Below, piece after piece: positions 5,301-47,700 of a DNA stretch of 64,000 nucleotides (position 1 is the stretch's first letter; the number at the start of each line of letters is the position of its first letter). A program made the position numbers and the translations under genes. This DNA is from Fimbriosthenelais zetlandica (lineage: Eukaryota): the NCBI GenBank assembly GCA_977030845.1, contig OZ365111.1, positions 15,252,001 through 15,316,000 of the forward strand, given 5' to 3'. The notes below the pieces were generated by a model, which saw nothing but the letters and a program-made list of their open reading frames with translations, ran no database searches and was not told where the DNA came from.

Positions 5301-6682
5301 GGGAGTATTACAATTTATTCATATATTGGGGGTATATTGAACCTAGGTCCAATATACCCCCGGGGGTAACTTGAAACTGGCGGGGGTATATTGGAACTAG
5401 GTTTAAAGTACCCCCGGGGGTATATTGCACCCAGGCCAAAGTTACCCCCGGTATCTTAGACCTAGGTTTATTATACCGGGGGGTACATTAGACAGGGGGT
5501 ACGTTAGAACTGGTACACCGGACAGACCCCGTGCTGTCCCAGGAGGCGGATTGGATAGAGTTGAGGAAGAGATCTTATTAAGATAAATCAATTGGCACTT
5601 TATTCCCCGCAGAAGGGTGCACATATTTAGCTCTAGAGATGGTTAGAGGGAGTTGTTCCCCAAGCTGCGGGGAGCCATGTATACTATTGATGTTACAGCG
5701 AATATATATACTCCTCTTGTTGACATTTATATAACGCATTGTGGAATTAAGTTTCCTCAGATTTGCTGCAATTCAGCAATTCATTTTCTTTATATGAGGG
5801 GTTTATCATAAATATAGATTTGGCATTTTCAAATTCTAAATTTGAAAGATATGGCAGTAAGGCTATCTAGCAGACTAATCTATAATGTTAAAGAAAGACC
5901 TCTCATGTCAGTATATACAACTTCAGCATTTATTTACAGCAACACATGTTGATCCCAATCACTGCAATATGGCGGCGTGATACACCTTGACAATAAATCC
6001 ATTGAATAGAGTAGATAAAACTCTATTCTACGAGGTAAATTATTCATACTCTGTTCTATAAAGAATGAGACAGATTGAAACGTCCAAGTCCCAATGGAAA
6101 AATGTGATCGACACAGAGATATCAGTACCAGATAAGACATGTTGTTCTAATCACTGACTGGCTTTGTCATAAAAAAAACTTCTGAGATCTGTGATATTTC
6201 AAAGTGAATGGAAATCTTTGATCTACATTTCTTCAAACGGTTTAGCACGCGTGCTGCAAGTTGTGAAAACTGGCGCTGCTAAAAGTTCAATATTTTATGT
6301 GTCACACTTATTTGGACACAAGCGCAATATATTATCAATAAATATTTTCTCTGATCCATGGATCTATAGGTCTGATATAGTGGCCTATAACAACATACTG
6401 CCTCTGTGTATAGGCTTTAAAGCCTTACATTGATATTTCCAGTAATTTCTGAAGGCCATTTTCGAAGTAATTTTTTTGAAACGGACCCCATATCTGTTAC
6501 TCAGAAATGGTGTAGGACAGTACATTGAATGGAATTCCCACTTCCTTATGCATCACGAGAATTACTGGAAACAACAATTTCAGGTCGAACCCATACAATA
6601 ATATTAGGCCTACATATATACCAAACATGATTAGATGATTATTATTTTATATGACACTTTATACAAATTATCATCTAAAACA

Positions 6683-25095: not shown

Positions 25096-28000
25096 ATGAA
25101 AAAGGCGGCGCCCGCGAAGAAGGGGAAAAAGAAGGCGGCTTCAGTTCTGGAAGAAGTCGCCGCCCCATCTCTCCCAGTCCTAGCAAAGTCATCTGGGTCT
25201 GCCAGCGAGGGTGTCAAGTCCAGGAAGTAATATACATATTAAATATATATATGCAAATAAAATAAATATATATATTTAAGTCACATATGAAAGTAGATTA
25301 AGAACCCTAACCTGGTTCTTTCAAGTTCCATGGTTTGGGGAAATCCTGGGAAAAATGTCCATAGTAGAGAGGAGAAAATGGAAAGTTATGTTGAGCACTG
25401 TATTTATATCTTTTTTTCACATGAAGGCTGAAGGCTCTACCCGATATATCCCCAGGGTCCACACCGAAATTGAAGGCGCCAGCCCCGCCACCACCACCTC
25501 CATATGCACCATCGGTTTCGGAAGCTAAGACGGAAAGGATAGATTTATCATCGTTTAAACAAAACAAGCGTGTGGCTTCATTCACGCTTCCTGTATGTTT
25601 CAATTCCGTTACCTATAAAATTATTTATTTCAGGGGCGGATCTAGGATTTTGCAACTGGGAGAGGGGGTCGATCTATATAAATCTAAGCCCACACATCAT
25701 AAAACTTTTAATTAAGCAATCTTTTCCTGCACTCTAGTAGGATCTTAACCACAGGGGTAAGTCTGTAAAGGTCTGTAAAATTTACAGACAGTGGTTCGGT
25801 CTAATCCCCCTGAGAATATGATAAATGTGTCCTCAAGGCCAGCTGGTATGATTGGGGCTGGGGGGCGTAACTTTGGGGGCATAAGCTCCCACCTGATCCG
25901 CCACTGTATTTTTATAGCCTATATTTAATCTTGCAATTTGTATCTTTTAAGAGAACCACAGATATTTTGTGGATAGATTCTACTATTACGACTTTGTTGA
26001 ATACTATAAACCAAGTTTCACTTGGGTTGTTCCAAACAATATTTTTGTAACTCCTTCAACTATAGTAATTGCCTTATCCTGTGTTTTTTAAAGGATGAAT
26101 CCGGAACGGGTACAAATCTGGTCAGTTCTTTATCTCAATTTGAGCTCCTGGTAAAGATGATAGCATAATTATATAATATAAACAATAATGTTCGGTTACA
26201 GTATTAAGTTTAAAATTAATTTTAAAGGTTAGAAAGTTAAAATATCCCTTTAATAATAATTAACCTTCACGGAAAATGTTCTTGTAACAAACGGTTTAAT
26301 TTGCTTCTTTTCAGAACTTTGATTTTGTCACAGAAGAGGTATGTACATTACCATACTCAACTATAATTTTAAATGTATATAGCTGGCTGTTGGTTTTTGG
26401 AATTCGGTGTACAACAATAAGGACATTTATTTTTGGATTCAATTTAATTTGATGTACACGTCCTCTTTCCAGGCGCAGAAGGAATCAGGCGGGGCACTAA
26501 GTAGGTTCTCCAGACAACTTATTCATACACTTACGTCTATATGACCGTTATTTGCAAGACAAATATAAAGGAATTACCTGTCATGAAATAATATTAGGAA
26601 TTAGAAGGCAATTTATCTTTTAAAATTAAATGAAATTAAAATTTCATTGATTGACTGACCATGGTATAAAATGCTCTAATCTAACAGATGAATGGCTTAC
26701 AAATGAGGAGTTAGTTAAAGGAAAGAAGGCCCTGCGCCAGATGAACACTGGAAAAGCTTCAATAACACGTGAGGAATTCATTTCATGAATATTTTGATTA
26801 CTTTTACTTTTTCATGCAATAATGCATCCATGGCTTCTACATGTATGTATTCTATTATCCATCCCTATACTCCAACACTTTCATTCTTGGATTCATCCAT
26901 TCTTGGATTCATTCATTCATTCATTCATTAATTGGAATAATTATTATCAGTTAATTCGTGCTTTCATTCAGTATATTTTTTTCTCATTAAATTTAAGTAC
27001 CTTTTTGTTCTCAGTTGATCGGGCAGCTTTGTTTGACAAGCATGAAATTTCTACACATTTTCCGTTGGAAAAACTCAAGGTACCGTATACTTCTACATTC
27101 ATTTAAACCACTGCCACTTCCTGATAGCCGTTAGCTTTTACCCTATCATAGATATTTATCATTACATCGTATTTAGAATTTTTTAAGAATTAAAAATGTA
27201 TAATTATTAATAAGAAAAAATACATTTCAGGATATCTTCCTCCACCGCAGTGGGAATGTGACGAAAATCCTGTTGGTAGGAGTGGAGCAGTTGACAGACC
27301 TGTTTTTCATCTACATCGATCAGTTATTTGGGAATGATATCATGAGGAACTACGTCGCCGAGATCATTCTCACGGGCTGCTCTCACATCACTGACCACAG
27401 TCTAGAAATAATTGTTAAACTCTTCCCTAACTTATCCAAGGTAGGCCTATGTTAATTTTACCATCAATCTTGTTTTTTCTTATTCTATCCATCATGTTTA
27501 TTCCTTTTTTAATTTGCTACCTTGGGCATGCAGTAGGGTGTAGGTCTCGGGTTCAATTCCCAGGCCATTCTCCTTATTTGCCAGACAGCGTTTCCTACTT
27601 GTTCAGTTGGAATAGAAAATCTGAGAAAATATTCTTTATTTTTGTGTTACAGATCAATATTGTTGGATGTAAGAATATCACAAACCGTGGCCTAAACCTG
27701 GTACAGGATAAATTGATTAAGATTGCTAACATCAATGTCACAGCGACATCGGTCAGCATTATTCAGCCGCTTGATCACAGCCGGACTAGCGTGGTCATAA
27801 AACTGGCAGGATGTCCTATCATCTCCCCAGCCTTCCTCTCTGACGTGGTTTATAACAATGATACAGCCTCCAAAAACCAATACTTCATAGGTAATAGTGT
27901 ATTCTACCTATTCTGTTCTTTGGTATTAGATGGATAGATTAATGAAAGGTGGGTGGATTAATTGTTCAGCAATTGGATGGATACATCCAAGAGTGGATAG

Positions 28001-31000
28001 ATAGATGATTAGATGGATGGAAAGGTAGATGAGGGAATAAATGGATAGATCAAAGTGTTGATAGATGGATGAGTGAATGGATGAATTTATTAGAGTCTTG
28101 ATAGATGGATGAATTGATCAAAGTATTGATAGATAGATGAATAGATCAAAGTGTTGATAGATGAATGAATAGATCAAAGTATGGATAGATGGGATGGATA
28201 AGTGAATGGATGAATAGATGGATGAGTGAATGGATAGATGGATGAAAGACTGGTTTGTTTTTAAGTGAATGGATGGATACATTACAGTGGATAAGTGGAC
28301 GACTAAATGGATTGATAGGTGGGATGAATAGTGAATGGATTGGTAGGCCTATATTATAGGTTATAAACGTCGATGAGTGAATTGCAATATTCCCTTCTTC
28401 ACTGGGAGACGACTAACTCCTCTCTATATATTCTATTCAGATTTGCTGAATGGACCACAAGTGTTTACATACCGAGCTATGGTGGTAACTAATCCAGACC
28501 TCAACACTAGTCTTATTGACCTGCTAGGAGGGAGTAGTGATAAAAGTAGCGAAAATCTGGCTCCTTTTGCTGTTGGCACTTTCAATGGCAGCGATGGGGC
28601 TGATTACAATCTTATAGAATGCTTACCGGTAAGTCATCATTAATTATTTTTTTCAAGAAATTGTCATGCATTTCAAAGGACCAAATGGACATTTTTCTGA
28701 TATATCTTTTCTGTTTGGGTTCGTTATTGTCGTTTATCAGAAAATTCCTTTTCTTTAATCAGAAAATGCTACCCACATTGATAACACAGAGGACACTTTA
28801 TTTGCTTCCCGTCCCACAAGAGAAGAACTTTATGCATTGCCTCATCCAGACAATCATTGGCATTCTGTTACTGGTAAGATTGCAATGTTTTTATTTCATG
28901 ATACTCTAATATTTTAAGCAATTGCGCTGACCATTTTCTTGTAATACTGGCTCCATTTTGTTCCAATGATATATTTACCATTACCATGAAGGCCAACTAC
29001 TAAGTAAAAATTCCATGTACTACTAACTAAAAATTTACTATTTTCATATACTACTAAGTAAAAATTCACTATTTCCATATACTACTACGAACTTTCAAAA
29101 AAGACATTTCCATATACTACTCATTATATATAAAAAAAATTTATATTTGCAATATAATTTTTTATGATCAGACGTCCGATTCAGACGAAAAGCATTACAA
29201 ATGGTGTTTTAAAATAATTTATTTGATACTCTTCTAGGATCCTTATGCTGTCTTCTGCTTGGTTGGAGTCTCAGCAGATGAAAGCTCCATGAATAACATA
29301 GAGGGCACTAAGGAGCTCATCCTCTCCACCCTCGCCAATGACACCAGGGGATCCTTACTCTTCAACGTCAAGAAAATCTGCAAAGAATCAACCAAGTACG
29401 ATTCCCTCTATATTTTGTTCCTCTATAATATTTGTTGAAATAATAGTTCAGAATTGGAATTGGAATTCATGAATGAAATTCAATACTTTTTATAAAATCC
29501 TTTCTCAATTTCGAACGTGGCACCAGGGAGGTTCAATTTCCCAAGCATTTTCCAAATTTGCTCTAGGCCTAGTTCTTTACCAATCAGTGCTGCTTTCTGG
29601 GTCTTCAAAGGCACTGTCTATGGTGAGAGGCATGAACCATTGCTGCCATTTGGCCGCATGTTTCTTACTCCCTGGGCTGAACGATGTAGAGTTCTCCTCT
29701 GTTGGTCTTGCAGTCATGTGGCTATGTCTATGAAGTCCTTGGATTTTCACATGCAGCGGGTTTGTTCTGATCTTTGGAGACTGAACTCTGCCCTCAGTGA
29801 TGAACTTAGCGGACGGATCCACGTCTGTAGTGTCATGGCCAATCAAAAAGATGTAAGTAGATCGTCAATTTATTTTGTATAAAGTACACGCCAACAGCGT
29901 GTTTCATTCCCATCTTCAAACATTGCTGTTTGATTGGTTTCGTACCATCAGATTCTGTTATCAACACTTGTTATGAAATTCTTAATTTTTTTCACCATAG
30001 GCTGGCTCAGTGATCGAGAAGTGCATGCAGAGTGCGTTGCCAGCTTTGACAGAGAGGAACAAGTCATACTCAGCACTGCCTAAAGATCTTCTCCTCACAA
30101 TGGACGATGTGCCGAAACAGAGAGGTCTTAAACCTGCAGTGGTCATAGCTGAACCTATACGGAAAAAGAAGAGCACAGTGTATGGGACACAGATCAAGAA
30201 TCATACAGCACTGCTGGACACCATGGAAATACTGGTCAGTACTAAATTCTACAACCAAATGTTCAAATTAAGATCTAATTCCAATCAAATTTCAAACATT
30301 GACCGCATTGGATGTAGGCCTAGTACTCTTAATATAATAATGCCTGGCTTGCAAGGACATTACACTTAGAACACAAAATAGGCCTACCGAAGGGAGTCGC
30401 CCCCTTGCACGACCAAATGTCGTCTATGGTAGCTAGGTGCTACCGTATTTGCCGGTGTATAAGCCGCACCTTTTTACCCTGGAAATCGTGACCTGCGGCT
30501 TATACAACGGTGATAAAAGAATTTATTTTTTCAAAGGGTCGTGTAGTGCAGTTGGAATCAGACGGGACGAAGTACACTGTTTCAGACAAGTATTGGCTGG
30601 CTGAGGTTTTGTCCTGTATCCTCTCTTTCCCCACGTCTAAAGTTGGCGAAAAGATCACTCAGGTCCACCCTGACACAGAGGCTATCTACCTACCTGATCT
30701 TCATGAAAAACTCGAGTCCATATTCCACGCAGAGGACGAGGTATAACCATTCGTCCACTATTCTTTCATTAAATTATTTTGACAAATCAGTGCTTTTCCA
30801 ATCGTTGTTCCAGAATTCTGTTTCGGCCCTTAAATATAATTCAAGATTGAGAGCCGCAGATATATAAATATTTCATTGTTACTTTGATCATAAACATGTT
30901 TCCAATGTCCAATTGTTGTGCAGGAATATATATATAATTATTGTATGTTTTGTTTTAGAAAGGGATTGAGGAAATGAAGAAAGGGTTTGAGGTATTAAGA

Positions 31001-34000
31001 CAGACTTTCCAGCTGGGATGGACTGTTGGTGATTGGATGATACTACTCACTAACCTGGCCCCCCAACCTCCTGTTCCTGTGGTGAGTCAGTTTCAAAATT
31101 GAGAAAAATTCAGAAATGTCAGTGGTTATACTATATGGTCAGTTCTCACGAGTTAGCTTCAATGTGGACGTATACAGTGTCCAACAGTGATTAAAAAAAA
31201 ATCTTTTCATATAAGTGGAATTCTCAGAGATAAAATGTATGATCTTGATGCGTCCATGGTGAGAATTGGGTAGCTTAATCTCAAAAACTGTAAAATCTGG
31301 AGATGGCTGAACACAGGAACCTCTAAATTAGTGTTACCGAGCGAACTGCTCAATATTGCTTCATAATGAACGGCAGAACCTGCATTTAAAATTAATGTAT
31401 CAGTATACTTTCTATTTATTATAGGTCAGAGGGCTAGTGTGAAATATATTAGACGCCAAAAATTATATTCCGGTTTCACCTTTTAAATTACAGGGGGATT
31501 GAAAACTATGGTCAATTCCACAGAACATGTTTTTTCTGACTACACTTACTGTCATTTGGGAAAAAGAAGCCTTCTGTTAGGTACATAAGTTTTATATTTA
31601 TATACAATACAGACCACACGATGTGGTACCATGAAATGTATTTGGTCCCACCATTCTATCACCCATTTCCATTAGGTAAGCTCTCAGAATAGCGTGTCGC
31701 TCGGTCACCACTCTGTCGCTCGGTCACCGTTCTGAGCACCACTCTTGATTAAAGCAAATATTGTTACATATGTTTCTTTAAAAAAAGTTTGTTGATCATT
31801 ATTCTATGATACAGACTTATTTTCTGTAGATTACATGGCAAATTTTCCTCAAACACTTGCATTTTCTGTAGGGGCAGAGCTTCATTCATTTCATTAGGCA
31901 TGAGAATGAGATGAAAAATGACCTATATCAAGTTCAATCATTATGTTTAATTACATTGACTATATCAGGGTTATGTTGTATCAAAAAAAGTTTCTACAAA
32001 ACAAGCTTTTTTGTGGATAATCTTACCAGAGAAAAGGTTGTTCGCTCGGTAACACTATGTGATGCCCAGTAACACTATGGGACAATACCAAGGTTAAACT
32101 CTTCTCGTGCCGAAACAAAAATAAGCCCTTGCACTCATCAGATAATACCGCATGTTAAAAATATTCTGAAGAGATTTCAATGATATAATTGCTACTTAAT
32201 TGCTAAGTAATAGCCAAAAAAGTTTGGGAAAAATGAATAATGAAATTTTCTGTGTGAAATTACTTGATAATGTGCCACAGCTTTACGTTCCTCTGTGGAA
32301 ACCTTTAAAAGCATCAGATAACAGATAAACAGTTTTATCTAAAATTTGTAAATCTTTATTTCTTAATCCGTCCGGGTTTTCAGCCAATTAAGGCTGACAA
32401 CGGCACGTAGTCTTCGTCGTCGTTGCTCTCGGCTGTCTGCTCTTCTCCTCTCACTTAATAGGTGACAACGGCATGTCGTCGTCGTTGCTCTCGGCTGTCT
32501 TCTCTTCTCCTCTCACTTGATATAGGTGACAAAGGCATGCATGTCGTCCTCGTTGCTTTCGGCTGTCTGCTCTTCTCCTCACTTGATATAGGTGACAAAG
32601 GCATGTCGTCCTCGTTGCTCTCGGCTGTCTGCTCTTCTCCTCTCACTTGATATAGGTGACAAAGGCATGTCGTCCTCGTTGCTCTCGGCTGTCTGCTCTT
32701 CTCCTCTCACTTGATATAGGTTGACAACGGCACGTCATCGTTGTCGCTCTCGGCTGTCTGCTCCTAACCTCCTTCTTCTCTCATACTCCCTCCTTCAGCT
32801 TCACTATCATTGAGGAGCCTAAACAGGTTGACAGCCCCAGTTTCCACATCCTCCAGCATTATACCAGTGTCTTTCCACCCAAGGCATCATGTGTCATTTT
32901 AACATGCGTCTTGGAAGCTCTGTATACCTGTAAAATAATTGAAGCCCATTTTTTTAAGTTACCCATACAGTTTACCAGCATACTTGTAAATAAGGCTTGC
33001 CACAACACTAAATTTTAATCAATATGTGTCATTTTATAAGTACAATCCCCAAATCTCATGATACCTTCTTCCATTGAGACATCTATCAGAGTTGGGATGT
33101 TATATTGTTGAGGAAAAAGCCATCTCATGATGATTTATACATTGTGCATCCAACTACATTGACTTTTGGAACAAACTTTTCAATTTGTATATACTTGTAC
33201 TAATGTAATGTATTCTTTCAATTATTTTAGTTACCAAGCGAATTTTGGTGGCGAGCAAACAATTCATTCAAAGTTGGCGATAATTCAGTAAAAAATGAAA
33301 GGAGCCCAATGTTTTCAGTCACCCACCATCTTACTTGTAAATAAGTGTTGCCACAGCACTAAATTTTGAATTAATTTTGTACAGAAAACATGACATTCAG
33401 GGTCTATGTTAACCACACTATGACGATGACAATCATTTTGGACATGAAACATGGAAAAACATGTCAGAATATATTAAATAACTTACAATTTGAAGGTTAG
33501 AGGCAAAGTAGAGGCCTTCTATCCACTGCACATGTGCAATGGTTCCTGTAGAGGCCGTCAGATGTGTCCACTGAGTGCTTTTTCCCACCCTCTGTATATG
33601 CGTGTCGCTTGGTCACTCTTGTTCGCTCGGTCACACTAGCCCTTTTGACTTGTGTAAATTCCATAATTTTTTTCAAACATTCATAGTATCACACTATATT
33701 ATACTTTAAACAAAGATGAGTATATGTAGGAAAAATTATTTGCTAATCTGAATCAATACAAATTATACAAGGTATTCTTTGTGTTCGCTCGGTAACGTAA
33801 AAAACTACCCCATTTCATAAAAAACAACGACTTCCTGTTCCATCCAGAATCACTGACAGATTTGATTAATTTCTTATTATTTTCTGTGTAGGCCATATAT
33901 CAAACTATTAATAGCGCTGGGAATTTGAAATATTCAACATAATCTCCTTTCCATATTAGCAAGCTGAAAAGTCATGTCGCTCGGTAACCCTCTTGCTACC

Positions 34001-37000
34001 CGATGCAATCAAATGGCCTAATATCCGTGAGCAGTGACCCAACTGTTTTGTTTCAGCATAAAATTGCATGCAGACAATTGTCCGTCATATTTATTCCACA
34101 ACAGCCCCTGTAATCAAAGTATTTTTTTAATATGTAAGCATGGAAATCTGTTATTTTTAATATTTTAATCATAATTGGGTCTAAAACTGGGTATTATGGG
34201 CCATAACTTCTTTATTTTCGATCGGAGGGCCATAAAACCATGGTGCCTCAGAAAGGACTCGACGAGATCTACCTGATAGAAAATGGTATAGTATTCTAAA
34301 TCAAGATCCCTTCACTCACTGACCCAAAAACTGCATTGAAGCTAACTCGTGAGAACTGACCATATAGTCTGAACACTTGGACGTCGAAGCGGCACAATAA
34401 AGGGATTGAAAGTCGCTGATGGTAAGGTGTAGAGAATGCCGCTCCGACTTCTAGGTGTTCAGACTTAAGCCTGGATTCCACCTATCAGATTATCTGGTCA
34501 AAATTGATCTGATCAGATTTTTGTAGGCCTTTTTTCCTACAAAAAATCTGATCAGATCAATTTTGACCAGATAATCTGATAGGTGGAATCCAGGCTTTAC
34601 CCAAAGATTTTATTTTGTCTTAACTGATGAATCAATAAATAAACTATAAAGTTAAGAGTCCCTTCTAATTTTGGTACCCATAACTCATGAGGGGAAGGAG
34701 TGAGTCTTTGAGTAAGAAAGCTGTGACTTCGGAAATGTCATGGAAATTAGCTCTAGTCTATAGCCCACAAAAGCCTATATAATTATGGTCTTTTAAGACT
34801 AGGTAATAATCACAAATGACGCATTATTAAAATATCATTGACAGGAGCCTTTCCTTGAGACTGATGGAAGCTGTTCTGCATCCATCACATACAACTTTAA
34901 CGTACCCTGCCCGGATCAAGTCGTCAGCCATGTTCTCTACGAACTCCTCCAACTCACCGAACCCTTCCTCGTGTGGAACAAGGGAGCCCTGCTACGATAC
35001 ACTCCAGTTCAAGTTCTCTTGAAATTCTCATCTCAGAAAACAAGTAGGTGACAACAATCATTGTAAGAAACAGAGATAGATTGTAGTTTTTGTGCCTGCA
35101 TTTCCAATTATAATGTACTGCAAGAAAATAATTATAGAATGTCAGAGCATTCTCTTCTATATTCTTTAAAGTGTGGATCCTGATACCCATAACCCCCCCC
35201 CCCCCCCCCTCCACCCCCACTCACCACCCCCAACTAACTCTCGAACCAACCACCCTAGCCGTCACCCCTGCATGTATTTTTATATTGTTTCGTCATTGCA
35301 CCTTTGAAGGAAGTTCATTGAGCTTGTTGTAAAGTCCAGTTTATGAATGTTTCCGTTATAGAGGGACTTTTACCCACTACAAAGGCAGAACTGAAAGTGA
35401 CCGCACCGTCCATGATGCAAGGTTTGAATCAGGTGGATCAAATGATGTATGATCATATTGTGAGGAACAGGGTCATCATGGAATATGTATTCAAACAGTA
35501 TAACCTCAGCTATACTTACAATGACAGCTTCGACTTCAAGGTAATTTAAACAATAGTGTAGATGACCTGATGGATAGATTGATGTGAGAGTTTGTAATCA
35601 CATTCGTTACGTTAGGTCAAAGACTTATACCCAGTCATTTTGTTATTTCATATTTAATATATGATGTATAATTCTTTCAGATGGACCTTGTAGACTTACC
35701 AGAGAATAGTCTTTTCAATGGCGGCGGTGAGTGTTTTTTTCTTTCTTTTAATTTATTTATTTTTGCAGAGTTTCATTGTAAGCATTCTAAATTTAATGTC
35801 TTCTTTTCTTTTTAGGCGATGGAAGAAACTTCCTCTATGGCCATACATATCGTTCTCAGCCAACATGTGAAACGTGTGACGAGAACATGCCATTGCTGAA
35901 ACGATTATGGGTGCGTTTAAAAATCATTTTTTATTAATTTATTTAATATTCATTTGTTTATATATTTAGTATTCAAACTGTTCATTGCTGATAAGTGAAT
36001 TAGATCTTATTGAATTTCATTAAGTTAATAACCCTGGGGAGTCTCAGGAGTTGGTTTTCAGGCAAAACACCAAAATTGTAAATAAACTACAGATGGAATA
36101 ACTATATGCTATGATATAAGTATTATTGATGCTATATTGGAAGACAAATTTACATTCATTATTTACAATTTTTTCAGGAAATGAGCTCAGACATCTGGCC
36201 CTCGTTTGTTGACAAGAATTTGTGTCATCTGAGCAAGCAGGTGAATCAGCAGGGGGCATGGTTTGATATCCCTCCCTCAGCCTCCAGTAAAGGATCAGTC
36301 ACCTGTTCCTTGCCTCTCTCGCCCTATGTCTTTAACAAGGCTGATATCACCATGCTAAATCAGGGACAGACTACGCTCATCAGTGTTACGTGAGTCTCTC
36401 ATTTATTATTTACACTTGCTGGTGTATAAGCCGCGGCCTGCGGTTAATACAACGAAGCGATTTTTATATGGATTTCTATACAAAGCAGCGGTTTATATAT
36501 GGATTTTAACCTGAGCGGTCAGGGGTGCGGTTTATAGTCCGGTGTGGTTTATACACCGGCAAATACGGTAGTTGCAAGGTACACCCCTATTAAGGTCTGT
36601 TAATATTAATTAGGCCCTTTACACATCAATGAGAAATATGTTAAGATAATTCTGTATTCTCGTATCTTACAGAGCGGCTACTGCAAATGGTGGTGAGGAG
36701 AAATATCAGGTTCGAAAAGGAAAGGAAGGAAAAGGAGGAGACGATGGCTTGACTACGTTTGAGCGTATTCGTGACGGCAAGGCTGAGACTATCTCTATGA
36801 CGCCCGGTGATGTTGATCTAGGACGAACTATTCAAATACAGTTGCAAACAAACCAGGAGGTATAATAATCACTTAGTCACAAATCTCTTTTCCGACCTGG
36901 AATACGTTCACCAGGATGGCAAAATGTTTGTAGAAGTGGAAAGTCGAAATGTCTTACAAATGTCTGCTAAGTGGGTATTCAAAGGCCAGTCAAGTCTCCC

Positions 37001-40000
37001 ATTGTCTATGATACATATACAATTTATGCTCTTTTCGTACTTTGTAGAGTAAGCCCAGGTTGGAGTTTATTTCTGGCGGAGAGAAGGTGATGGAAGGCAC
37101 CCTGGATGTACCCAACTGCCATTTACAAGTATCCTCAGAAACCCAGCTCACCTTCCTCCTCAATGCTTCAAAACATCCGGTGGGCATGCACCAATTTCAT
37201 TTCATTTTTTACAATCTTCCTGTGAGTTAAAATTAGTTCATCTGATGTCAAATTTGTACATTATACTTTTACATGTGTTTTAATTTTGGGATCTTTCACA
37301 TTATGTCTTAGGGATCTTCAATAAAAATGGATTGGGAAGTTGGAATGCGACTAGAGGCGACAGACCGCTTGAATCCCAACCTTATCTGTGTGGCGACTGT
37401 CAGTGAGTTTATGGTTCTCCACCATCTGTTATGTTGTTCTTTTTTGAGCCCAAAGTATCATTTTTTGTGACATTCCTATATCAAAATTGTCAGTAATCAT
37501 CTTTGTAAATGAAACAGATGACAAAAAGATGAAAGATGGAGAAGTGTCAGAAATACTGATCCACTTTGATGGATGGACGAACCGGTATGACTTCTGGACA
37601 GAGCCCTCTGCTCATGATCTGCATCCTATTGGTTTTACCCGACAGAAAGGTAGCGAGATAGGTTACAGCAAACTGGAAGCCCCCAAAGGTGAGCACCATC
37701 TAGCAGAAAGTCCATACCTAACATTCAAAATGCCTATTAGTTGCAAACATGAAGTGAATCTTGTGTTCGGTACACTTTATTTCAGGATACAGTAGGGGTA
37801 GGTTTGATTGGAACACATACCTGAATGAGGTGCTCTGCCTGCCAGTGCCATACGACTTATTCAGTGAGGTAAGAAAAAATAGATGTTCAAACAACTAATG
37901 GCTGCAACAGTTGTCTATAAAAATTCACCGGTGCCATGCATGAGCGCGACCGCTTAAATGCTCTGCTCTGTTCCAACCATAATATTTTTGTTTTCTTGCC
38001 CAACAGGAACAAACCAAAGGCTGTGAACCCTTCATAGCAAACTATGACCAGACGCCTGATTATATAGAGGGACAGCAATACATGACTGCACTAAGAAAAT
38101 GCCGGAATGGCCTCAACCCCATTGGTAATTATATCATAAAATTCCCAAAATCCTGGATCCATTGGAGGGTGGTCTATTAGGCTCTCGCTAATCACTCTTA
38201 AACCATCCTTTGTCTTTGAACAGCTACCCTAAAGAAAGGTCTCAACCAAATGAAAAGCACTGATCTCAAATCGTTGGTTGATGAAACTTCACGGGAGACA
38301 AAGAAACATCCCTTCGTTATTCCCTTACCGAAAAACCTTTCTGTGGATGATTTGAAGTATCCGAAGATACCCAACTTTAAGGAGCAAACACTCAATGTCA
38401 TCTGTACAAATAATGGTAAGTTTCTGTGACGTCTTATACAAGCGCTTCTGATTAATTTTGGAACAAGAAAATTACATATAGCGAAAATTTTTGCAAACTC
38501 CTGTTGGAATACACGGTTATAAAAGCTGGGTACATGTATTTTTCTATAGTTCTACTTGTCTTCATTTAGGTTTTCTACATTTCATTGATATGGCTGGTAT
38601 GTCCATGGATGAGGCAGCTCTGGAGACTTTGAAAAATGGTAACACTGGTGCACTGTCAACAGCCTTGGGCAAACTAGTGACACAAGATGTGAGTCCCTCT
38701 TCAGTGTCACAGCAGGTAACAAATATGTAACTGATTAAGTGGAATGACGAAAACTCTTCATTCTTATTTCAGCATATCCTGCCTAAGAAGGTGAAGTCTC
38801 TCATAAAAGAAGCATCTGATATTCCTCTTGAACAGGTCAGCTTTCAGCTTTCTAGTCGTGTGACTTTCAAATTCAAAAGTCCATGATCTATATTAGAACA
38901 TAATTACATTACTTGTTTTCAGCTGGAGACGTTCATGAAGTCATTGTTATTAGACATGATTGTCGTCTTTGGGCATCGTCCACGCGATGACCATTCTAAG
39001 AGTAACAACTATGAACAGGTAATCTTTAAATACATAAACTGATCAACAATTGACTATACGATACAACAATTGAATGCAACTGAATAAAAATCTCCCTTGT
39101 TCAATACAGCTATGCAAGTCAACAGTTGACAGAGGCATGAGGGAACATGATCTGTCAGAGCACCTCAAGGTTGATGAAGACTCAATTTATTGGTGTACTC
39201 CCCACATGAATGCTGCACCTAGATCTGGTCTGACAGAGGTGCCTATGCAACAACTGGAAGACTACCACCATCTCACTACCTGTCTCAAACTCTCACATAA
39301 CTCAATCACAGAACTGCCTGAGAACTTCTTTGAGAATTTACCAGTCCTTCAAGTGTTGGACTTGTCAGAAAATCAAATTTCCAGTCTTCCTAGTTTTGCA
39401 GCTGCGAAACTATTACGGTATGTTTTATCTATTATGTATTTCCTAAATAGCCTGAACATGATCAAACTAAGGATAAATAAACAAAGTACAGATAGGTCTC
39501 TCAGGAATGGATATGATGATTTACCTCTGTTCTGTGTATATTAATATCCGTATTTGTTGCAATGCAGGGAGTTAAACTTGAGCAACAACAAGATCTCCAA
39601 TATCCCTGCTGATATCGCCAGTTGCCCTATACAGGAGTTGAATATCTCAGGGAATGCTCTTAGTGGAATTCCAGGACATGTGTTGGGGATAGGACAACTC
39701 CGATTTTTAGAAGCTGGCAATGTTGGTTTGACAAAGCTAGAAGATTCCATCAAGAAACTGAGCCTCCTAGAAGAGCTAAACATCCAAGGCCATTGTCTGG
39801 AGGTTTTACCGGCAGGTTTGGGTGAGCTGACCAACCTGAAGAAGCTGAACATCTCCGGTATACCATGGTTCAACCAAGACAACAACCGAGCTGTATTGAG
39901 CCGTCAGGCTTTTGATGATTTTATGAACTCTAACCCCATCACTGCAGAAATACCTGATAAGGTAATAAGATTAGATAGGCTACACTGTAGGAGAAATTTC

Positions 40001-41739
40001 ATGTCAGATTGCATCTGGATGTGTTAGTCTTAATGCACGACTTTGAGCAAAGCAAGGAATACTTAATCAAGTAAAATCTGTCCATCTGAAATTTCTTTTC
40101 TAATTTCAGGAGAAGAATACCTTGTTCAATGGTGAAGGTGTAGGTCAGCAAAGTACATTGGATTATAAAGGCATTGTCAAGCTGAACACTAATATCTTCA
40201 TGATGTTTCCAAGACTTGGCAACAACTCTGGAGACAGTGATGATGATCAAAGTGAAAAGACCGAAGGTAAGGCGCGGAAATAACTCCTCGCTCATTCTAA
40301 ACACCTAAACTATCATTCTTTCATTGAACAATATATTATTTCTTTGTAGGTGAAGACATTTTGGCTCCTCTTTTTGGCTTGACCAAGCTGACAGATCTGG
40401 TGATGAATTACCTTGGATTTAAGATAATTTCTGACAAGGTCTCCTCCCTGAAAGAACTACAGCACCTGGATGTGTCCCACAACCCTCGACTGGAAACCAT
40501 CAGTGCTGAAGTCGGAGTTTTAGCTAATGTAAATGGTATGATAGTGTAAAATTGTCTGCTCATTTCGGTTGATTAAAGAAACATAAGAGAGGACCAAGCG
40601 TTCTACCCTGCAGCACTCAATTCAAAATGTATTGAGTAGTTCTGTTCAGTTCTCTACATTGATATGCATAGTTTTACTCATTGTATACTGTCAGTTATAC
40701 TAGTTATCTCAGCTTCCCTTTGTACTACTCAAGCTTATGGAAAAAATTTCTTTGGCAACCATCAAAGGCTTTCTTAAAATCAATGAATGCTCCCTGATAC
40801 TTGGAGTCATAGAATATGGTTTAACAATTGTATTTTTTTCTTTTGTAGCATTACACCTGAAAGATTGCAATTCACTTAAAACACCACCAAAGGAAATAGT
40901 GAGGCGAGGGTATAAAGCCATTATGGGCTATCTACGGCGGCTCCAAATGGGCTCTGTGTCCTGTAAGCGAACAAAGCTAATGATGGTGGGCCTTGGAGGC
41001 GCAGGAAAAACAAGGTTATACTCTTGATATTGATTGAAAATATTTATAATTTACAACCCTGATACAACTTGCCCTTATACTTGTCCTTATATTTTTTCGA
41101 CAGCACGATGAAAGCCCTGATGTCTCACAAACACCAATCAGATGGGGATGCCTTTGTGACAGATGGTATTGACATTTTAACCTGGAAAGTCTGTTATGAC
41201 CAGTCCTCTGACAACAGTGTCACATACAGTGTATGGGATTTTGCTGGCCAAACTGTATACTACAACACACATCAGGTATTTAAAACTATCTTATCAAAAA
41301 CTGCATGGTACTGCATGAAAGTGTGTCCTGCATGGGGCATCAGTGCATTGTACTGTACTTAAAGTATTTAATGCTTGTAATTTTAACATGTATTTGCTTT
41401 TATTTCTCCAGTTCTTTTTATCAAATCGAGCCATCTATTTACTGATGTGGAATGTGAGATTGGGACATGAGCATGCTGGATTGGACTTCTGGCTTAGTTC
41501 TATCGCTTGCCATGCACCTAAAGCCCCCATCCTTGTGATAGGCACACATATAGATCAGGTAGAGAAGTTCTGGCTGCCATCTGAGGAAATACAGAAACGC
41601 TACCCCCAGATATGTGGCTTCTATTCCGTCAGTTCATATACTGGAGACGTAAGTAATGCACCTAGATGTATTCTAAATTGCCAAAAAATGACTTCAAAGT
41701 TGAATGGAAAAAAGCAGATTACAACCATACTGGAATCTG

Positions 41740-41770
<31 letters not shown>

Positions 41771-44700
41771 CCATTGGACCTTTTAAACTTTCTTAACAGG
41801 GGATAGACGGATTGGCCCAGGAGATATATAATGTGGCTCTGAAGGAGAAATATATGGGAGAGAAGATACCTCAAGCTTGGCTCAATTTGGAGGAATCCAT
41901 AGTAAGGTATGGTATACATTATTGGTGTATTTAAGAAGGGTTTGTGTTGCCTTCGCCGGTTGAAAAGTTAACGTTTAAACAATATTGCATCATAAATTAT
42001 GTATGTTTATTTGCAGGCGAAAGAGCGAGAAGTCTGAAAGTCTTCTAGAGTGGCAGGAGATAGAAGCCATTGCTGAGACTGTAGGCATTGTGGAGACCAC
42101 AGAGGTATGGTATATTCAAACACTTCAATTTCTGGCGGATTCCTATGTTTAAATTAGAAACGTTCGGATTTTTATTTGGCAGTATCCTATAATTAAATAA
42201 GAAACTGGCGGATTTTATTTCTTCTACAGGTGATGCAAGCCATCAGGTTTCTACATGACCTTGGAAGTATCCAGCATTTTGACAATGACTTCCTTAGGTC
42301 CAAAGTTGTCATCAACCCTCAGTGGATCGTCAATGTTATGTCATGCGTAGTCAGCGTCCATGAAAATGCCATCAAAGTAAGTTGAACTGGGAGTACTATC
42401 AGACCATAAGCTTGCAATTACTTCCTAGGTATAGTTTTCCTGGCCGCAACTATTACTTAGATTAAGTGCTGGGCTATCGAAGGGCAGCCCTATACTTTCA
42501 ATATATCGATTGCTGCCTCTCATAAGTAAAGTTTAACTGTCTTGGTTGTTGCTGCGACGATACCCCAATCAATACTATTTGATTTCTCCTTTTTTTGTTT
42601 ATTTCATTTGGATGAAGCTTTATTAAAATTATGGTGGCTCTGTTATCAGATCCTGTTGTTTTCTCAGCAACGTATCTTTGTTTTCATTTTGGTTTAATAT
42701 TTTACAGGATGGTAAGCTGCTACACAAGGACATTGCTGTGATCTGGAGGGACTATGACTCAAGCCTACATGAATGGCTGCTGAGACTGACTGAGGAATTT
42801 GATCTGACGTTCCCACTCCACAACGAAAAAGCCAACCTCGTGGCCTGCCTGCTTCAGGACAAGAAACCAGAAGTAAGAACTAGCTTCTGTGACGGAATGT
42901 GACAAAAATGATAAGAGCAATCTGTGGACAAAATTTAAATTTGTTTCCCCATATTTTCATTTTTAGTTTGCATGGCCAGATGTCAGCGATATACCTGGTC
43001 AACACGAGACGAAAATGATCTACAAATTTGATTACCTTCCTGCTGGCCTATTTAACAGAGCTCAGGTAATTCATATGTGTTTATATCTGTTTATTATACA
43101 GTGTATGAATATTTTTCGGGAGGTCCTCAGTTCATTTCCCCAAGCATTCTCCAAATTTCCCATTGACCTTCTCCACCCAGTACTGCTAACTGGGATATCA
43201 AATTCCAACCATGTCTCCCACTATATCATGAGAGGCCTATAAAAGTAGCCTACCATGCATTGTTGCCGTTTGAGAAGAGCAAAAACACTTCCTGCTATAA
43301 CCTACCTTCTCATTGAAAACTCTAAAGTCTTTATAAAATGGTTTTAATACTTTGTATACATAAAAGGTGAGGTTGCACCAGTATTCCGATAACGCCATCC
43401 TATGGAAGAAGGGATCAATACTCAATAAAACGGGTCACAAAGCCCTGATGACTCAGAAGGCGGGAGCCAGGGTGGAAGTCCGGGTACAAGGCCCCTGTCC
43501 TGAAAACTTCCTCTTCCTGGTGCACGAGGTTTATGAGACGCTCATCAGCGAGGCTTACAATGGAGTCTCCTACGACTTCCTCATCCCCTGCTCCGACTGC
43601 ATAAAAGCGGTAAGAAATATATGCGATTTAGGCCTACTTCCGTTACATAAACATTTATGATACATGAAATATGTTAAAACTCTATTATGGACTAACTCAC
43701 TGTGTCTATTTTGGTTATTTTCAGGGCACATATGATCCTTGCATGTTTGAAGCCTCCAAAATCCGACGTGCTACAGAACTAAAAGTGCCATTTTTACAGT
43801 GTGATAAATATTTCCACACCCTATCGCTGACAGAAATCCATGGTAAATAGGTCTACATATACATTCTGCATGCCTACCTATAAATTTAAAGCCTTTGCAT
43901 GTTGATGTTAGCCTGGTTATTTAAATTTAAGAATTTGATGAGACGTTTTAGGATTTTAACATTGCCAATATTTTCAGCCTCAATGCCTCCGGATTCCAGT
44001 TCTGATTTCGATGCACATCTAGAGCGGAGTATCCGGGACCTGAAGGACCTGAGGTCAGATATGGAGACTGACGTCTTCATGTTTTATTGTAATGATGACG
44101 TGCCACAAACCGGTGATGACAAAAAGATCGAGCCACGAACTGTCTACAATGACCTCCTCTCTGAGGGCTTTAAAGTGTAAGTTTAAATGAGATTTCTTTC
44201 ATAAAAGGTTCTTCTTAATTCAGCTCGTTCCGAACACCTGGGATTAATATTTTTTATGTTCTTTGACTTCAGGTGGTTTACTCCTGATCCCAAATCTGTT
44301 AACCTTAAGTCTATTGCAATGACAATGAAAAATTCAGGGGTGAGTATGACTTTTTCTCTTTGGAATAAACTGTTATAGCACCAATTTCAGAAGGTGGAAA
44401 ACCGAGTATAGGCATATAGGTGTGAAATATGTTATAAATGTAGCCTTTTATTCTCAACCTTTTTCCTTCTCTAGATGGTTTTAATTCTGGTGTCTGATAA
44501 GTTTGTTATGGACAATGACTGCTGCAATGTGTTTTACTATGCTAAACACACTCTACACAAGCGCCTACAGATTATCTCACTAGGTGGAAACCAGTGGCCA
44601 AAATCTGACATTGGACTCCAGATTGCCAGTGAGGTAGGCCTACTGAGTTTTTAATCCCATTATCTCTCCTTTTGAAATAGCATTGGAAGTTTCGCCTTTG

Positions 44701-47700
44701 TGAAGACCTTTGGTCTGTTTCGAAATTCCCAAAAGCCTGCAACAGTACCAGTATGCGATTGGCAATATTGTAACCAGCGGTTTCTTTTCAGGTTTATGTG
44801 AAAATGGACGATAAGAAGAGATACACACACAAGAAACCCGAACTGATAAAAGCTTTGGGCTCTAAGACTAAAGCTACAATGGTAGGTTGTTTGCTTATAC
44901 AATCTCACCAATGCAATTGAACTTTCCTGTTACCTCTTTTTTATCTGTAACCATTCCAAAGTTAACCAATACTCTAACTAATAACTTGATTAAATATAAT
45001 AAGTTTTGTATGTAATTTTTCAGACCGCCCAGCCTAAGTGCTTCTTTAGCTACTGTTGGAGTAACTCTCATGATGCCATCAAGAAGGGATCGAGGAAGGT
45101 GGAGGGAGCTCTGGGCTGGGGCGATCCAAGAGACTTCAAAGACTACATAGAGAAAGCTGGGGTCTCCTGCTGGATGGACATTGAACAAGTTGGACAAGTG
45201 AGTATAGCTTTCTCCTGGCCTTAACTAAAAGTTTCATTTTTTTGTGATGTAGCGATTCATCCTGGATGGTATTTTTTGGGTATTGTAGCCTATTTTCATT
45301 TCTCTTTGAACAGGGAGGCTTGTTCGAAGACATTGCGACTGGACTTCGACATGCCAAAGCAATTGTAGCTTGTGTATCAGACGAAGTAAGTCATATAATT
45401 ATTGATCAACACTTTGATTATTAACAGTGAATATTTGAGATATTTTCCTTTCCTGAATGTATGGAAGTGAAATTCTGATAAATAACCATTATGCTTTTGC
45501 CATTGTATTGCAGTATGCCAAGTCTAAAAACTGCCAAATGGAACTGAGATTTGCTGTAACGACATTGAGGTTACCCCTTGTTGTAGTGGTTGTGGGTACG
45601 GGGTATCAGTGGGAAGCTTCAGAGGTAAGTTGCTGGGGTATAAGCCCCTACCTTGAAGTAGCCATACCTCTGGTAGCTGTGGTAAAGACTATAAGCTGCA
45701 GCTTATTCCCAGATGCCTCTTTCTGTGCTGTCCACACTTGGATCCTTCTGAACGTAGTCACTCACTGAGCGAGTGCAACACGTCTTATTATATTAGCCGC
45801 ATTGGTGTATAAGCCGCAGGCTTATCTCAATTTCTCTTGGAATTACTTCTTTGAATTACGAGTTTTCTAATTAAGTGATTGGTTTGCTGATTTGAAGGTG
45901 GGAATGCTGACATTGGGGTCACCAAAAATCAACTGTCAGTATGAGAGTGCCTCGGCCAAGGATAGAATACTCAGCGCTGTCCAGGCTGTCCTGCCCAAAG
46001 ACGATCAGGAAGAAAGTCAAAGTTCACTAGAGAAAAAGAAGAATGATGAGCAACACCAAGCGTATCAGGTAGGCTTCAAAATGAATTACTGTGAAGTTCT
46101 CACAGAGGACCTCTGATTAGAACTATCGGTAACTGAACTGATGGTCAAAATGTCGATTAGTCAGACGCCATATATAACTGTCATATATCCGTCTACTGGA
46201 TTTTATCAGATGCTACATGAAAATATTTGCCACTGTCCATGCATTAACCCCAGCCTTATGTTTTTCATAGGAACTCCTTGAACTCGCCCAGAGAAAGTTC
46301 CTGAGACAGGTCAATGTTTATGCCAATGCCATGGATTGCCAACCTTATCCGCGTCTCTTCTTCCTGGACTTCGCTACAGAGAATGACAAAGTCAATGAAA
46401 GTCAAACCGCTACACAGTGCACTGGAGGTGATAAGGCGAGAGATGGGGAATGTGAGAACGCAATACAGTGCACAGAGGATGCCAAGGGTGATACCAAGGA
46501 AGACTTGTCTGATACCGATCTTCGTAGTGCCAAATATGTTGTCAGAATCCTATGTGAACATGAACAGGTAAAAAGGTCTTCATTTTGCACACTTGTCTGG
46601 GGTTTTCTATAGGTCCAGGTAATCCAGTGCACACAGGCTTATAAAATTTCCCCAATATGCATGTTTCTCCCAATGTGACTTCTATGTTGTGTTACTAATT
46701 GTTTTAGATATTTTTACCTGCAAATTATGACTTATGACTGATATTTTCAGTCTCGACGTATTGGTCCTATAATTGCCTTGTATCCACCATTGCCTTTGGA
46801 GCTTTTAACAGTGTTCATTGAGACTATTGTACATTATGGTTGTTATCTTTCTATAGGGATGGCATGTACCGGGTGCCAGCTTACCTCTACCTACCGTACC
46901 CGTGGGAGGGATAGAGGAGCAACTGGACACTATAGCACCATATGGTGCCAGAATTATGGCCATCCTCAGACATACTCCTCTGGACTTCTCAGTACTGAAC
47001 ACTGACAGAGGCGAGGCCCTCAGAGCTAAGTTTGAGGAGGTGAGAGCTTCTGCCGTATATTTTTGAGCGTGGATATTCGGAGATAATGGTACTTTATGAT
47101 CAGCCAGGATGTCCATTAATTTTAATAATTAACTTAGTTTAAAGAATTCGGGTCTGGATGCAGTTGATCACCAATTTAACGAAAGCGCCCATATCAGATA
47201 ACAGTTTTATTTTTGCGATGATGTTACAAGTAAGTAATTTATAAGTTGTAATCAAAATGTCCTTCAAAAATTCCTTTTGACTCATATACTTAACGTTTGG
47301 GTATATCCTATATGATTGTGGCAATTTTTTTGTTTTCTAGGGATGCTCTTTGGATACTGACTTCCAGCAGGAGTACAGCTATTTTCGCAATCTCCTGATC
47401 CAGTTAGACAAAACCAATACTATGGGCGGTCTCACCAAGTGCCATCTACCTAACGGTATGGTGGTTTGGTTGTGTGAGGAGCATCGTACAGCTGACCCAA
47501 GGATCTCTAAAGTCAGCGAGGGCAGCCGCTCAAGTGGACAAACAGAAATGGCCAGCATCAACCCTGATCAAATTACTAAAAGTAAGTGCCCTATTAGATC
47601 CATGGTTTACTGGGACATATTCAAAATAAATAATATATAGTGATCATTCAGGATAGGTCTGGACTGCTAGTAGTGACAACTGCACTTATCCAACAAAGTA

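What the first reader, a model, noticed from the sequence alone, without database searches (positions are those of the whole stretch)
28441..35043. First Roc domain looks catalytically dead: a possible built-in pseudo-dimer partner
Seen: the first module aligns by eye with the second, but G1 GLGGAGKTS is replaced by TNPDLNTS, G3 WDFAG by IECLP and G4 GTHID by GVSAD, while COR motifs persist. Known: Roco GTPases are regulated through COR-mediated dimerisation. Inference: an inactive Roc-COR in cis could form an intramolecular pseudo-dimer that tunes the active Roc.
Basis: partly seen in the sequence, partly recalled or inferred. Interest (0 to 1): 0.7.

Follow-up and report, generated by a model that had tools for sequence, protein, structure and literature searches.

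The report
Dead Roc-COR copy in doubled Roco gene
An animal ("worm") gene of the LRRK2-type Roco GTPase family carries, upstream of its normal GTPase unit, a second and very diverged copy that has lost every GTP-binding motif yet is kept under selection. This is a likely natural "pseudo-GTPase" partner, but its fold, its RNA and any pairing remain untested.

Summary
Window 28441-35043 holds clean, phase-compatible exons; both ends of the finding are true exon ends. Spliced, they give about 511 aa that align collinearly with the canonical Roc-COR at 40.9-43.8 kb (Smith-Waterman z 5.8, 0 of 500 shuffles). Support lies mainly in the COR-A and COR-B parts. The Roc part alone is not significant against module 2 (z about 2), but its second half also aligns with a canonical paralogue (z 3.7).

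Three consecutive exons are conserved, and only the exons, in another species: 52% aa identity, same splice sites, pN 0.30 against a saturated pS 0.78. So the module is functional coding sequence, and it is single-copy in its own genome.

The only Walker A motif on the + strand of the 64-kb window belongs to module 2. Four automated alignments place G3 at VGTFNGS rather than IECLP. G1 has three possible registers, all dead.

Pfam, PDB sequence searches and a paralogue HMM do not recognise module 1. I could not fold it, because a spliced sequence has no reference here. No RNA run was listed, so "one polypeptide" rests on an ab initio exon chain. The pseudo-dimer idea stays an untested inference.

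The parts
27653..27890 (+). Preceding exon. It holds the end of a Cys-type LRR and then ...SDVVYNNDTASKNQYFI. It may carry beta1 and the P-loop remnant of the degenerate G domain (register NNDTASKNQ).
   Evidence: Exon chain. MAFFT, three modes, aligns NNDTASKNQ under GLGGAGKTS.
28441..28628 (+). Exon A: (D)LLNGPQVFTYRAMVVTNPDLNTSLIDLLGGSSDKSSENLAPFAVGTFNGSDGADYNLIECLP. It holds the candidate dead G1 and G3 positions.
   Evidence: Acceptor ttcag|, donor |gtaagt. DP score 11.8. SW aligns DKSSENLAPFAVGTFNGS with DQSSDNSVTYSVWDFAGQ.
28763..28873 (+). Exon A2: KMLPTLITQRTLYLLPVPQEKNFMHCLIQTIIGILLL (beta4 and alpha3 equivalent). The acceptor could instead lie at 28679.
   Evidence: RTLYLL aligns with RAIYLL of module 2 and of L009. 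Splice sites; the DP chose 28679.
29238..29395 (+). Exon B: DPYAVFCLVGVSADESS... (beta5 plus the dead G4, VSAD in place of THxD). It ends in phase 2.
   Evidence: The G4 register is reproduced.
29714..29852 (+). Exon B2: (N)HVAMSMKSLDFHMQRVCSDLWRLNSALSDELSGRIHVCSVMANQKD, an insertion followed by a beta6/G5 equivalent. It restores the frame between exons B and C.
   Evidence: Found by the DP. 50% aa identity to the orthologue contig L003:137-268 with the same acceptor phase.
30001..30234 (+). Exon C: alpha5 of the G domain and the start of the COR-A-like region (..DDVPKQ.. / ..ALLDTMEIL).
   Evidence: 49% aa identity, 78/78 residues ungapped, to L003:517-750. Aligns with module 2, L009 and L006.
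30537..30740 (+). Exon D: COR-A winged-helix motif GRVVQLESDGTKYTVSDKYWLAEVLSCILS.
   Evidence: 57% aa identity to P0002/L003:839-1042. Same motif as module 2, LGSIQHFDNDFLRSKVVINPQWIVNVMSCVVS. 33 of 100 ESM-Atlas feature hits are COR-A clusters, score 0.93.
30959..31081 (+). Exon E: end of the COR-A-like part (..WMILLTNLAPQPPVPV).
   Evidence: Splice sites. Collinear with ..LVACLLQDKKPE of module 2.
34845..35043 (+). Exon F: start of the COR-B-like part (ITYNFNVPCPDQ...FLVWNKGALL).
   Evidence: Splice sites. COR-B part SW z 4.6, 1/1000 shuffles.
35362..35540 (+). Exon G: continuation of the COR-B-like part. The acceptor could instead lie at 35335.
35816..35910 (+). Possible COR-B tail exon with CxxC (SQPTCETCDEN). 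Weak.
   Evidence: DP score only 0.7. By eye it resembles module 2 LIPCSDCIKA and the CxxC pairs of paralogues L008, L009 and L011.
40713..43842 (+). Module 2, given for comparison: a canonical Roc-COR in ten exons, with G1 GLGGAGKTS, G3 WDFAGQ and G4 GTHID.
   Evidence: Pfam Roc, COR-A and COR-B hit its exons. LRRK1, LRRK2, MbRoco2 and CtRoco appear in the PDB search. It is the best Pfam COR-B match in the genome.

Best explanation
Window 27.65-35.9 kb encodes a real, single-copy protein module of about 510-590 aa under purifying selection. It is a strongly diverged copy of a Roc-COR tandem.

Its COR-A and COR-B parts are still recognisable. Its G domain has lost the P-loop, the DxxG Asp and the N/T-K of G4, keeping only the G4 Asp. 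It therefore cannot bind or hydrolyse GTP in the canonical way: it is a pseudo-GTPase.

The module lies 5' of an MBT repeat, an LRR block, a canonical Roc-COR, two regions that look TIR-like by eye (Pfam found no TIR on single exons) and a C-terminal CNVM box. It is most likely in the same reading chain as all of these.

The mechanism I consider most likely is inferred, not shown. The dead module acts as a nucleotide-independent structural partner of the live Roc-COR, using its retained COR-B-like half. That half is the dimerising part in bacterial Roco and in LRRK2. On this reading the protein would carry an asymmetric Roc-COR pair, instead of depending on GTP-cycle-linked homodimerisation.

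Shown here: the exons, the motif loss, the conservation, and collinear similarity to Roc-COR. Inferred: the G-domain fold, a single transcript, and any COR1-COR2 contact. The 0.55 below is for the identity claim, namely a conserved, motif-less Roc-COR-derived module in this gene. I put the pairing mechanism at about 0.25.
For: (1) Gene structure. There are nine exons with canonical AG/GT sites and compatible phases. Exon 29714-29852 resolves the only phase clash and is conserved in the orthologue.

(2) Homology.
- SW of module 1 against module 2 gives z 5.8, 0/500 shuffles, over 289 x 269 collinear residues.
- COR-A and COR-B are each significant on their own: 4/1000 and 1/1000 shuffles.
- Among 28 Roc-COR sequences of the genome, module 2 is the best hit.
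- Canonical paralogues L009 and L006 give collinear alignments at z 3.7 and 3.6. The L009 alignment covers beta4, G4 and beta6 of Roc and runs into COR-A.
- Every profile method places its best local alignment on the same COR-A motif.
- Protein-language-model neighbours of exon D are COR-A clusters, 33 of 100, score 0.93.

(3) Selection. In a second species (Logan contigs L003 and L004, runs ERR14368248/9), exons B2, C and D are 50, 49 and 57% identical at protein level. They have no gaps and the same splice positions, and only the exons align at DNA level. Over these 190 codons pN is 0.30 and pS is 0.78, which is saturated.

(4) Dead G domain. The only [AG]x4GK[ST] on the + strand of the window is module 2's. 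G3 reads TFNG or ECLP, and G4 reads VSAD.

(5) Live neighbour. Module 2 passes Pfam Roc, COR-A and COR-B, and hits LRRK1 at E 4.7e-10.

(6) Literature. [quoted passage not shown]
Against: - Pfam finds no Roc or COR on any module-1 exon at E <= 0.1, nor genome-wide at E <= 10.
- PDB sequence searches with exons A, B, D and F return nothing relevant.
- HMMs built from 27 or from 9 paralogues score module 1 no better than the top 2% or so of shuffles. hhalign gives P 0.16.
- The Roc part alone is not significant against module 2 (z 1.9-2.2), nor against a six-sequence Roc HMM (rank 86 of 2001).
- The G1 register is ambiguous.
- No orthologue sequence was found for exons A, A2 and B, the part that carries the dead motifs.
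- There is no structure prediction and no RNA evidence.
- The exons linking module 1 to the MBT repeat include two weak ones, with DP scores 4.6 and 0.7. A stop at 35935, an AATAAA near 36082 and an ATG at 36181 would allow two genes.
Confidence: 0.55

Rival explanations
1. There are two adjacent genes. An upstream gene encodes a stand-alone LRR plus dead Roc-COR protein ending near 35.9 kb. A downstream gene encodes MBT, LRR, Roc-COR, TIR-like regions and the CaaX box. Any partnership would then be in trans.
For: If the donor at 35911 is not used, the frame stops at 35935. An AATAAA lies near 36082, and the next exon begins ..cag|GAA ATG.. at 36178-36183. The two exons just after exon G are the weakest in the chain, with DP scores 4.6 and 0.7. 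No RNA run was listed.
Against: All six linking exons have strong acceptors and gtgagt-type donors and stay in phase. The putative intergenic gap would be only about 250 bp. Exon 36178 is preceded by a strong polypyrimidine acceptor, as an internal exon would be.
Confidence: 0.25
2. Only the COR-like part is homologous. The roughly 215 residues in front of it are not a G-domain remnant but some other alpha/beta or disordered region.
For: The Roc part alone gives z 1.9-2.2 against module 2. There are no Pfam, PDB or ESM-Atlas hits for exons A and B. Three G1 registers compete.
Against: SW against canonical paralogue L009 aligns beta4, alpha3, beta5, G4 and beta6 collinearly and runs into COR-A (z 3.7). 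MAFFT in three modes gives the same G3, beta4 and G4 register. The spacing from the candidate P-loop Gln of DLLNGPQVF to G4 is 104 residues, as in module 2 (my own count on the sequences). From general knowledge, COR is only known directly after Roc.
Confidence: 0.1
3. The resemblance to Roc-COR is chance or compositional. The exons encode an unrelated conserved domain.
For: All family-level profile tools fail. The best shuffle reached 63 against the observed 67.
Against: Three sub-regions score independently in the expected order. Collinear hits to three different Roc-COR sequences exist. ESM features independently point to COR-A.
Confidence: 0.07
4. The exons are decaying relics of a duplicated Roc-COR, no longer translated.
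For: Catalytic motifs are lost and divergence is extreme.
Against: All nine exons have open frames and intact splice sites. Conservation with saturated synonymous sites is limited to exons, and exon boundaries are identical in another species.
Confidence: 0.03

Closest known systems
Roco family GTPases without a kinase domain (MFHAS1/MASL1-type LRR-Roc-COR) and LRRK1/LRRK2
   Same: Module 2 has LRR-Roc-COR with intact G1, G3 and G4, and passes Pfam Roc, COR-A and COR-B. Its Roc exon hits LRRK1 (8e04, E 4.7e-10), MbRoco2 (4wnr), LRRK2 and CtRoco. Module 1 aligns collinearly with it.
   Different: As far as I know, and in the review read here (PMC6337361), described Roco proteins carry one Roc-COR per chain. 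Here a second, motif-less copy precedes it. There are also an MBT repeat (Pfam E 3e-9), no kinase, regions that look TIR-like by eye only, and a CaaX-like end.
Bacterial CtRoco and LRRK2 Roc-COR homodimers (the GAD-like model)
   Same: [quoted passage not shown] Module 1 keeps a COR-B-like half.
   Different: Those are symmetric homodimers of two live G domains. This would be an asymmetric live/dead pair, possibly within one chain. It was not tested.
PseudoGTPases and tandem pseudoenzyme-enzyme pairs such as JAK JH2-JH1 (from general knowledge)
   Same: A catalytically dead paralogous domain is retained next to the live one under purifying selection.
   Different: No such case was found in the held paper library for Roc-COR: zero papers combine Roco or 'COR domain' with pseudoGTPase. 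The G fold of module 1 is unverified.
Another P-loop-less ROCO-like gene noted by this scan in the same genome (s1-228818)
   Same: It too is a Roco-like scaffold whose G domain lacks nucleotide motifs, in a genome with a large Roco expansion (58 exon-level COR-A matches).
   Different: It lies at a different locus, is split by SPRY-like inserts, and is not a tandem with a live Roc-COR. No paralogue of module-1 exons C and D exists in the genome.

Membership tests
Roco (Roc-COR) family - module 1 | Roc G domain recognised by the family profile (Pfam PF08477) | tested here: not met
   No Pfam hit on exons A or B at E <= 0.1. A six-sequence Roc HMM ranks module 1 86th of 2001. This is an exon-by-exon test only, because the spliced domain could not be scanned.
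Roco (Roc-COR) family - module 1 | G1-G4 nucleotide-binding motifs | tested here: not met
   No GxxxxGK[ST] in any register, and none elsewhere on the + strand of the window apart from module 2. G3 is TFNG or ECLP; G4 is VSAD.
Roco (Roc-COR) family - module 1 | COR-A directly C-terminal of Roc (Pfam PF16095) | tested here: inconclusive
   The Pfam profile misses it. Against that, SW of the COR-A part gives z 4.2, all profile methods pick the same winged-helix motif, alignment to L006 is collinear at z 3.6, and ESM features point to COR-A clusters.
Roco (Roc-COR) family - module 1 | COR-B after COR-A (Pfam PF25497) | tested here: inconclusive
   The Pfam profile misses it and there is no ESM hit. 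Pairwise SW against module 2 COR-B gives z 4.6, 1/1000 shuffles.
Roco (Roc-COR) family - module 2 and the gene as a whole | Roc, COR-A and COR-B in tandem, with intact G motifs | tested here: met
   Pfam Roc, COR-A and COR-B hit the exons. PDB hits to LRRK1, LRRK2 and bacterial/archaeal Roco. Motifs GLGGAGKTS, WDFAGQ and GTHID.
PseudoGTPase | Ras-like G-domain fold | not testable with these tools
   The spliced protein has no reference.
PseudoGTPase | Loss of nucleotide-binding or catalytic motifs together with evolutionary retention | tested here: met
   Motif loss. Retention is shown only for exons B2, C and D: pN 0.30 against saturated pS. No orthologue data exist for the motif-bearing exons A and B.

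The most novel reading that the evidence does not exclude
This is a single-chain asymmetric Roco. A dead Roc-COR permanently occupies the COR-B and Roc dimer surface of the live Roc-COR in the same polypeptide. The GTPase would then work as a built-in live/dead heterodimer, uncoupled from the homodimer-monomer cycle proposed for LRRK2 and CtRoco. It would be a natural experiment on how Roco dimerisation controls GTP turnover.
Probability: 0.2. Interest if true: 0.75.

Novelty: new variant of a known kind. Interest (0 to 1): 0.5.

Why it matters
How dimerisation through COR controls the Roc GTPase is a central open question for LRRK2 and Parkinson's disease biology. A natural protein that pairs one live and one dead Roc-COR would give a defined asymmetric system in which to test whether one active site suffices, and what the partner contributes structurally. 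It would also add Roc-COR to the list of enzyme and pseudo-enzyme tandems. At present this is a sequence-level candidate in an unannotated invertebrate genome, seen in only two species, without RNA or structural support.

Tried and rejected
- Exon-level Pfam scans of module 1 found nothing relevant.
- PDB phmmer searches with exons A, B, D and F found nothing relevant.
- Own-genome searches with exons C and D and with three linker exons returned only themselves, so there is no paralogue.
- The 1.84-billion-protein HMMER search with exon D gave one true hit, the 94-aa Logan fragment P0002. The other three hits are repeat-protein artefacts.
- The word-indexed protein search with pieces of exons A, B and D found nothing. 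P0002 is a singleton cluster.
- Paralogue-family HMMs (27 and 9 sequences) and hhalign do not detect module 1 beyond the COR-A motif.
- ESM Atlas gave no usable hit for exons A and F.
- For sequencing runs, none was listed for either stretch.
- Complex prediction was not used. The domains that should touch are split over several exons and cannot be given as single chains.
- My ab initio chain also placed three exons in the 3.7-kb intron 31082-34844 (31872-32058, 32526-32604, 32799-32985). I rejected them as over-prediction: they score low and overlap a tandem repeat, and exon E joins exon F directly in phase 0.
- I first took 29714-29852 for a repeat-derived false exon. The orthologue showed it is real.
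- Shared intron positions between the two modules are only approximate: three phase-0 introns lie within 0-4 residues of each other. I do not count this as evidence.


Full report
**What the window is.** There are no long ORFs. The + strand from about 27 kb to 47.8 kb holds many short open segments flanked by AG/GT, as in an intron-rich animal gene. The window is G000:C11:15252001-15316000 of a 447-Mb, 79-contig assembly. Other notes of this scan call the animal a worm.

**Gene model.** I read the splice sites by hand. I also ran a small dynamic-programming exon chainer, using a codon log-odds model trained on the obvious exons plus generic splice matrices. The exons of module 1 are:
- A, 28441-28628
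- A2, 28763-28873 (the DP chose acceptor 28679)
- B, 29238-29395
- B2, 29714-29852
- C, 30001-30234
- D, 30537-30740
- E, 30959-31081
- F, 34845-35043
- G, 35362-35540 (or acceptor 35335)

Exon B ends in phase 2 and exon C must start in phase 0.

Spliced, the module is 511 aa. A possible further exon, 35816-35910, carries a CxxC that by eye resembles the one after COR-B in module 2 and in paralogues.

Module 2 is ten exons, 40713-43842. It has GLGGAGKTS, VWDFAGQ and VIGTHIDQ. Pfam Roc, COR-A and COR-B hit its exons, and its Roc exon hits LRRK1, MbRoco2, LRRK2 and CtRoco in the PDB. It is the best Pfam COR-B match in the whole genome.

**Is module 1 real coding sequence?** Yes.
- An exhaustive HMMER search of 1.84 billion proteins with exon D found one genuine relative, the 94-aa fragment P0002 at 57% identity. 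The other three hits are internally repeated proteins with inflated scores.
- P0002 lies on two 1.2-kb Logan contigs, L003 and L004, from runs ERR14368248/9.
- Those contigs also contain exon C (49% identity, 78/78 residues ungapped) and exon B2 (50%). The acceptor and donor positions are the same.
- At DNA level only the three exons align, at 68-71% identity.
- Over these 190 codons pN is 0.30 and pS is 0.78, which is saturated. This indicates purifying selection on the protein.
- The module has no paralogue in its own genome.

**Is it Roc-COR-derived?** The evidence is real but modest.

In favour:
- SW of module 1 against module 2 scores 67, against 37.3 +/- 5.1 for 500 shuffles (z 5.8). The alignment runs collinearly from the G5 region through COR-A into COR-B.
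- Split by position, COR-A gives z 4.2 (4/1000) and COR-B gives z 4.6 (1/1000).
- The genome holds a large Roco expansion, with 58 exon-level COR-A matches, many of them on contig C11. Among the 27 long ORFs I took from it, plus module 2, module 1's best partner is module 2.
- Next come the canonical paralogues L009 (z 3.7) and L006 (z 3.6), both collinear. The L009 alignment covers beta4, alpha3, beta5, G4 and beta6 of Roc and runs into COR-A.
- Protein-language-model neighbours of exon D are dominated by COR-A clusters: 33 of 100, score 0.93.

Against:
- Pfam sees nothing on module-1 exons.
- PDB sequence searches see nothing.
- Family HMMs and hhalign recover only the COR-A winged-helix motif, at non-significant scores.
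- The Roc part alone is not significant against module 2 (z 1.9-2.2).
- ESM features give nothing for exons A and F.

My estimate is about 85-90% that the region contains a COR-derived part. It is about 80% that the roughly 215 residues in front of it are a degenerate G domain.

**The motif claims.**
- G4: GVSAD under GTHID is reproduced by every automated alignment. Only the Asp survives.
- G3: SW, the end-gap-free global alignment and MAFFT (three modes) all align VGTFNGS with VWDFAGQ. IECLP then falls in an extended switch II. Either way the Asp is gone.
- With the second G1 register, the distance from G1 to G4 is 104 residues, as in module 2 (my own count on the sequences).

No register has a Walker A. 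The only [AG]x4GK[ST] on the + strand of the 64-kb window is module 2's. 'Catalytically dead' is thus robust, on the condition that the fold really is a G domain. The domain probably begins before 28441.

**One polypeptide or two?** The chainer links exon G to the MBT repeat (Pfam E 3e-9) through these exons: 35681-35726, 35816-35910, 36178-36389, 36673-36859 and 37048-37221. All are in phase, and most have consensus sites. The first two are weak. A stop at 35935, an AATAAA near 36082 and an ATG at 36181 would allow a two-gene reading. The linker exons have no paralogues. For sequencing runs, none was listed. I put one gene at about 70%.

[quoted passage not shown] Module 1 keeps a COR-B-like half but has no nucleotide site. 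The most economical reading is a nucleotide-independent partner of the live Roc-COR, in cis or, failing that, in trans. I could not test it, and I give it about 25%.

**Novelty.** The paper library holds no paper combining Roco or 'COR domain' with pseudoGTPase. The review describes one Roc-COR per protein. I class the finding as a new variant of a known kind. It is moderately interesting, limited by the lack of fold and RNA evidence.

**Left out.** Structure prediction, fold search and Pfam on the spliced module were not run. A spliced sequence has no reference in these tools, and long sequences may not be typed.

Noticed in passing
G000 genome-wide; loci L005-L034, many on contig C11 at 0.78-2.1 Mb: There is a large Roco expansion: 58 exon-level Pfam COR-A matches, mostly genes with a single 400-450-aa COR exon. 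Only 5 places match Pfam COR-B.
   Followed up: partly
L011 (G000:C11:16873129-16876584): This paralogue has an open frame of more than 1100 aa holding LRR, Roc and COR. G1 is GESHSGKS, no DxxG is present, and G4 reads THAE. Its C-terminal domain resembles the window gene's C-terminus (..RWLCDAHYE against ..VVWLCEEHR). It is a partly degenerate Roc 1.6 Mb away.
   Followed up: no
window 47730-47848: The predicted last exon ends ...SATCNVM followed by a stop, a CaaX-like box. This suggests prenylation of the giant protein.
   Followed up: no
window 37312-37868: A single MBT repeat lies between the two Roc-COR modules (Pfam PF02820, E 3.2e-9 on exon 37449-37688).
   Followed up: partly
window 43978-45624: Two regions look TIR-like by eye (DVFMFYCNDD... 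and KCFFSYCWSN...). Pfam gave no TIR hit on the single exons.
   Followed up: no
window about 27540-27600, 29477-29700 and 43109-43240: A short interspersed repeat occurs in three introns of the gene (translated ..RSRVQFPGHSP.. / ..QAFSKF..). It produced the top spurious hits in the module 1 against module 2 blastp.
   Followed up: no
window 32398-32711: A tandem repeat of about 65 bp units lies inside the 3.7-kb intron between exons E and F. It reads open in several frames and attracted false exons in the ab initio chain.
   Followed up: no
window 3685-5337: A long open + strand frame is made of tandem units of about 23 aa (..GGIFGLGLVYPQGITSNIMYIHK..). This is probably a minisatellite rather than a gene.
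   Followed up: no
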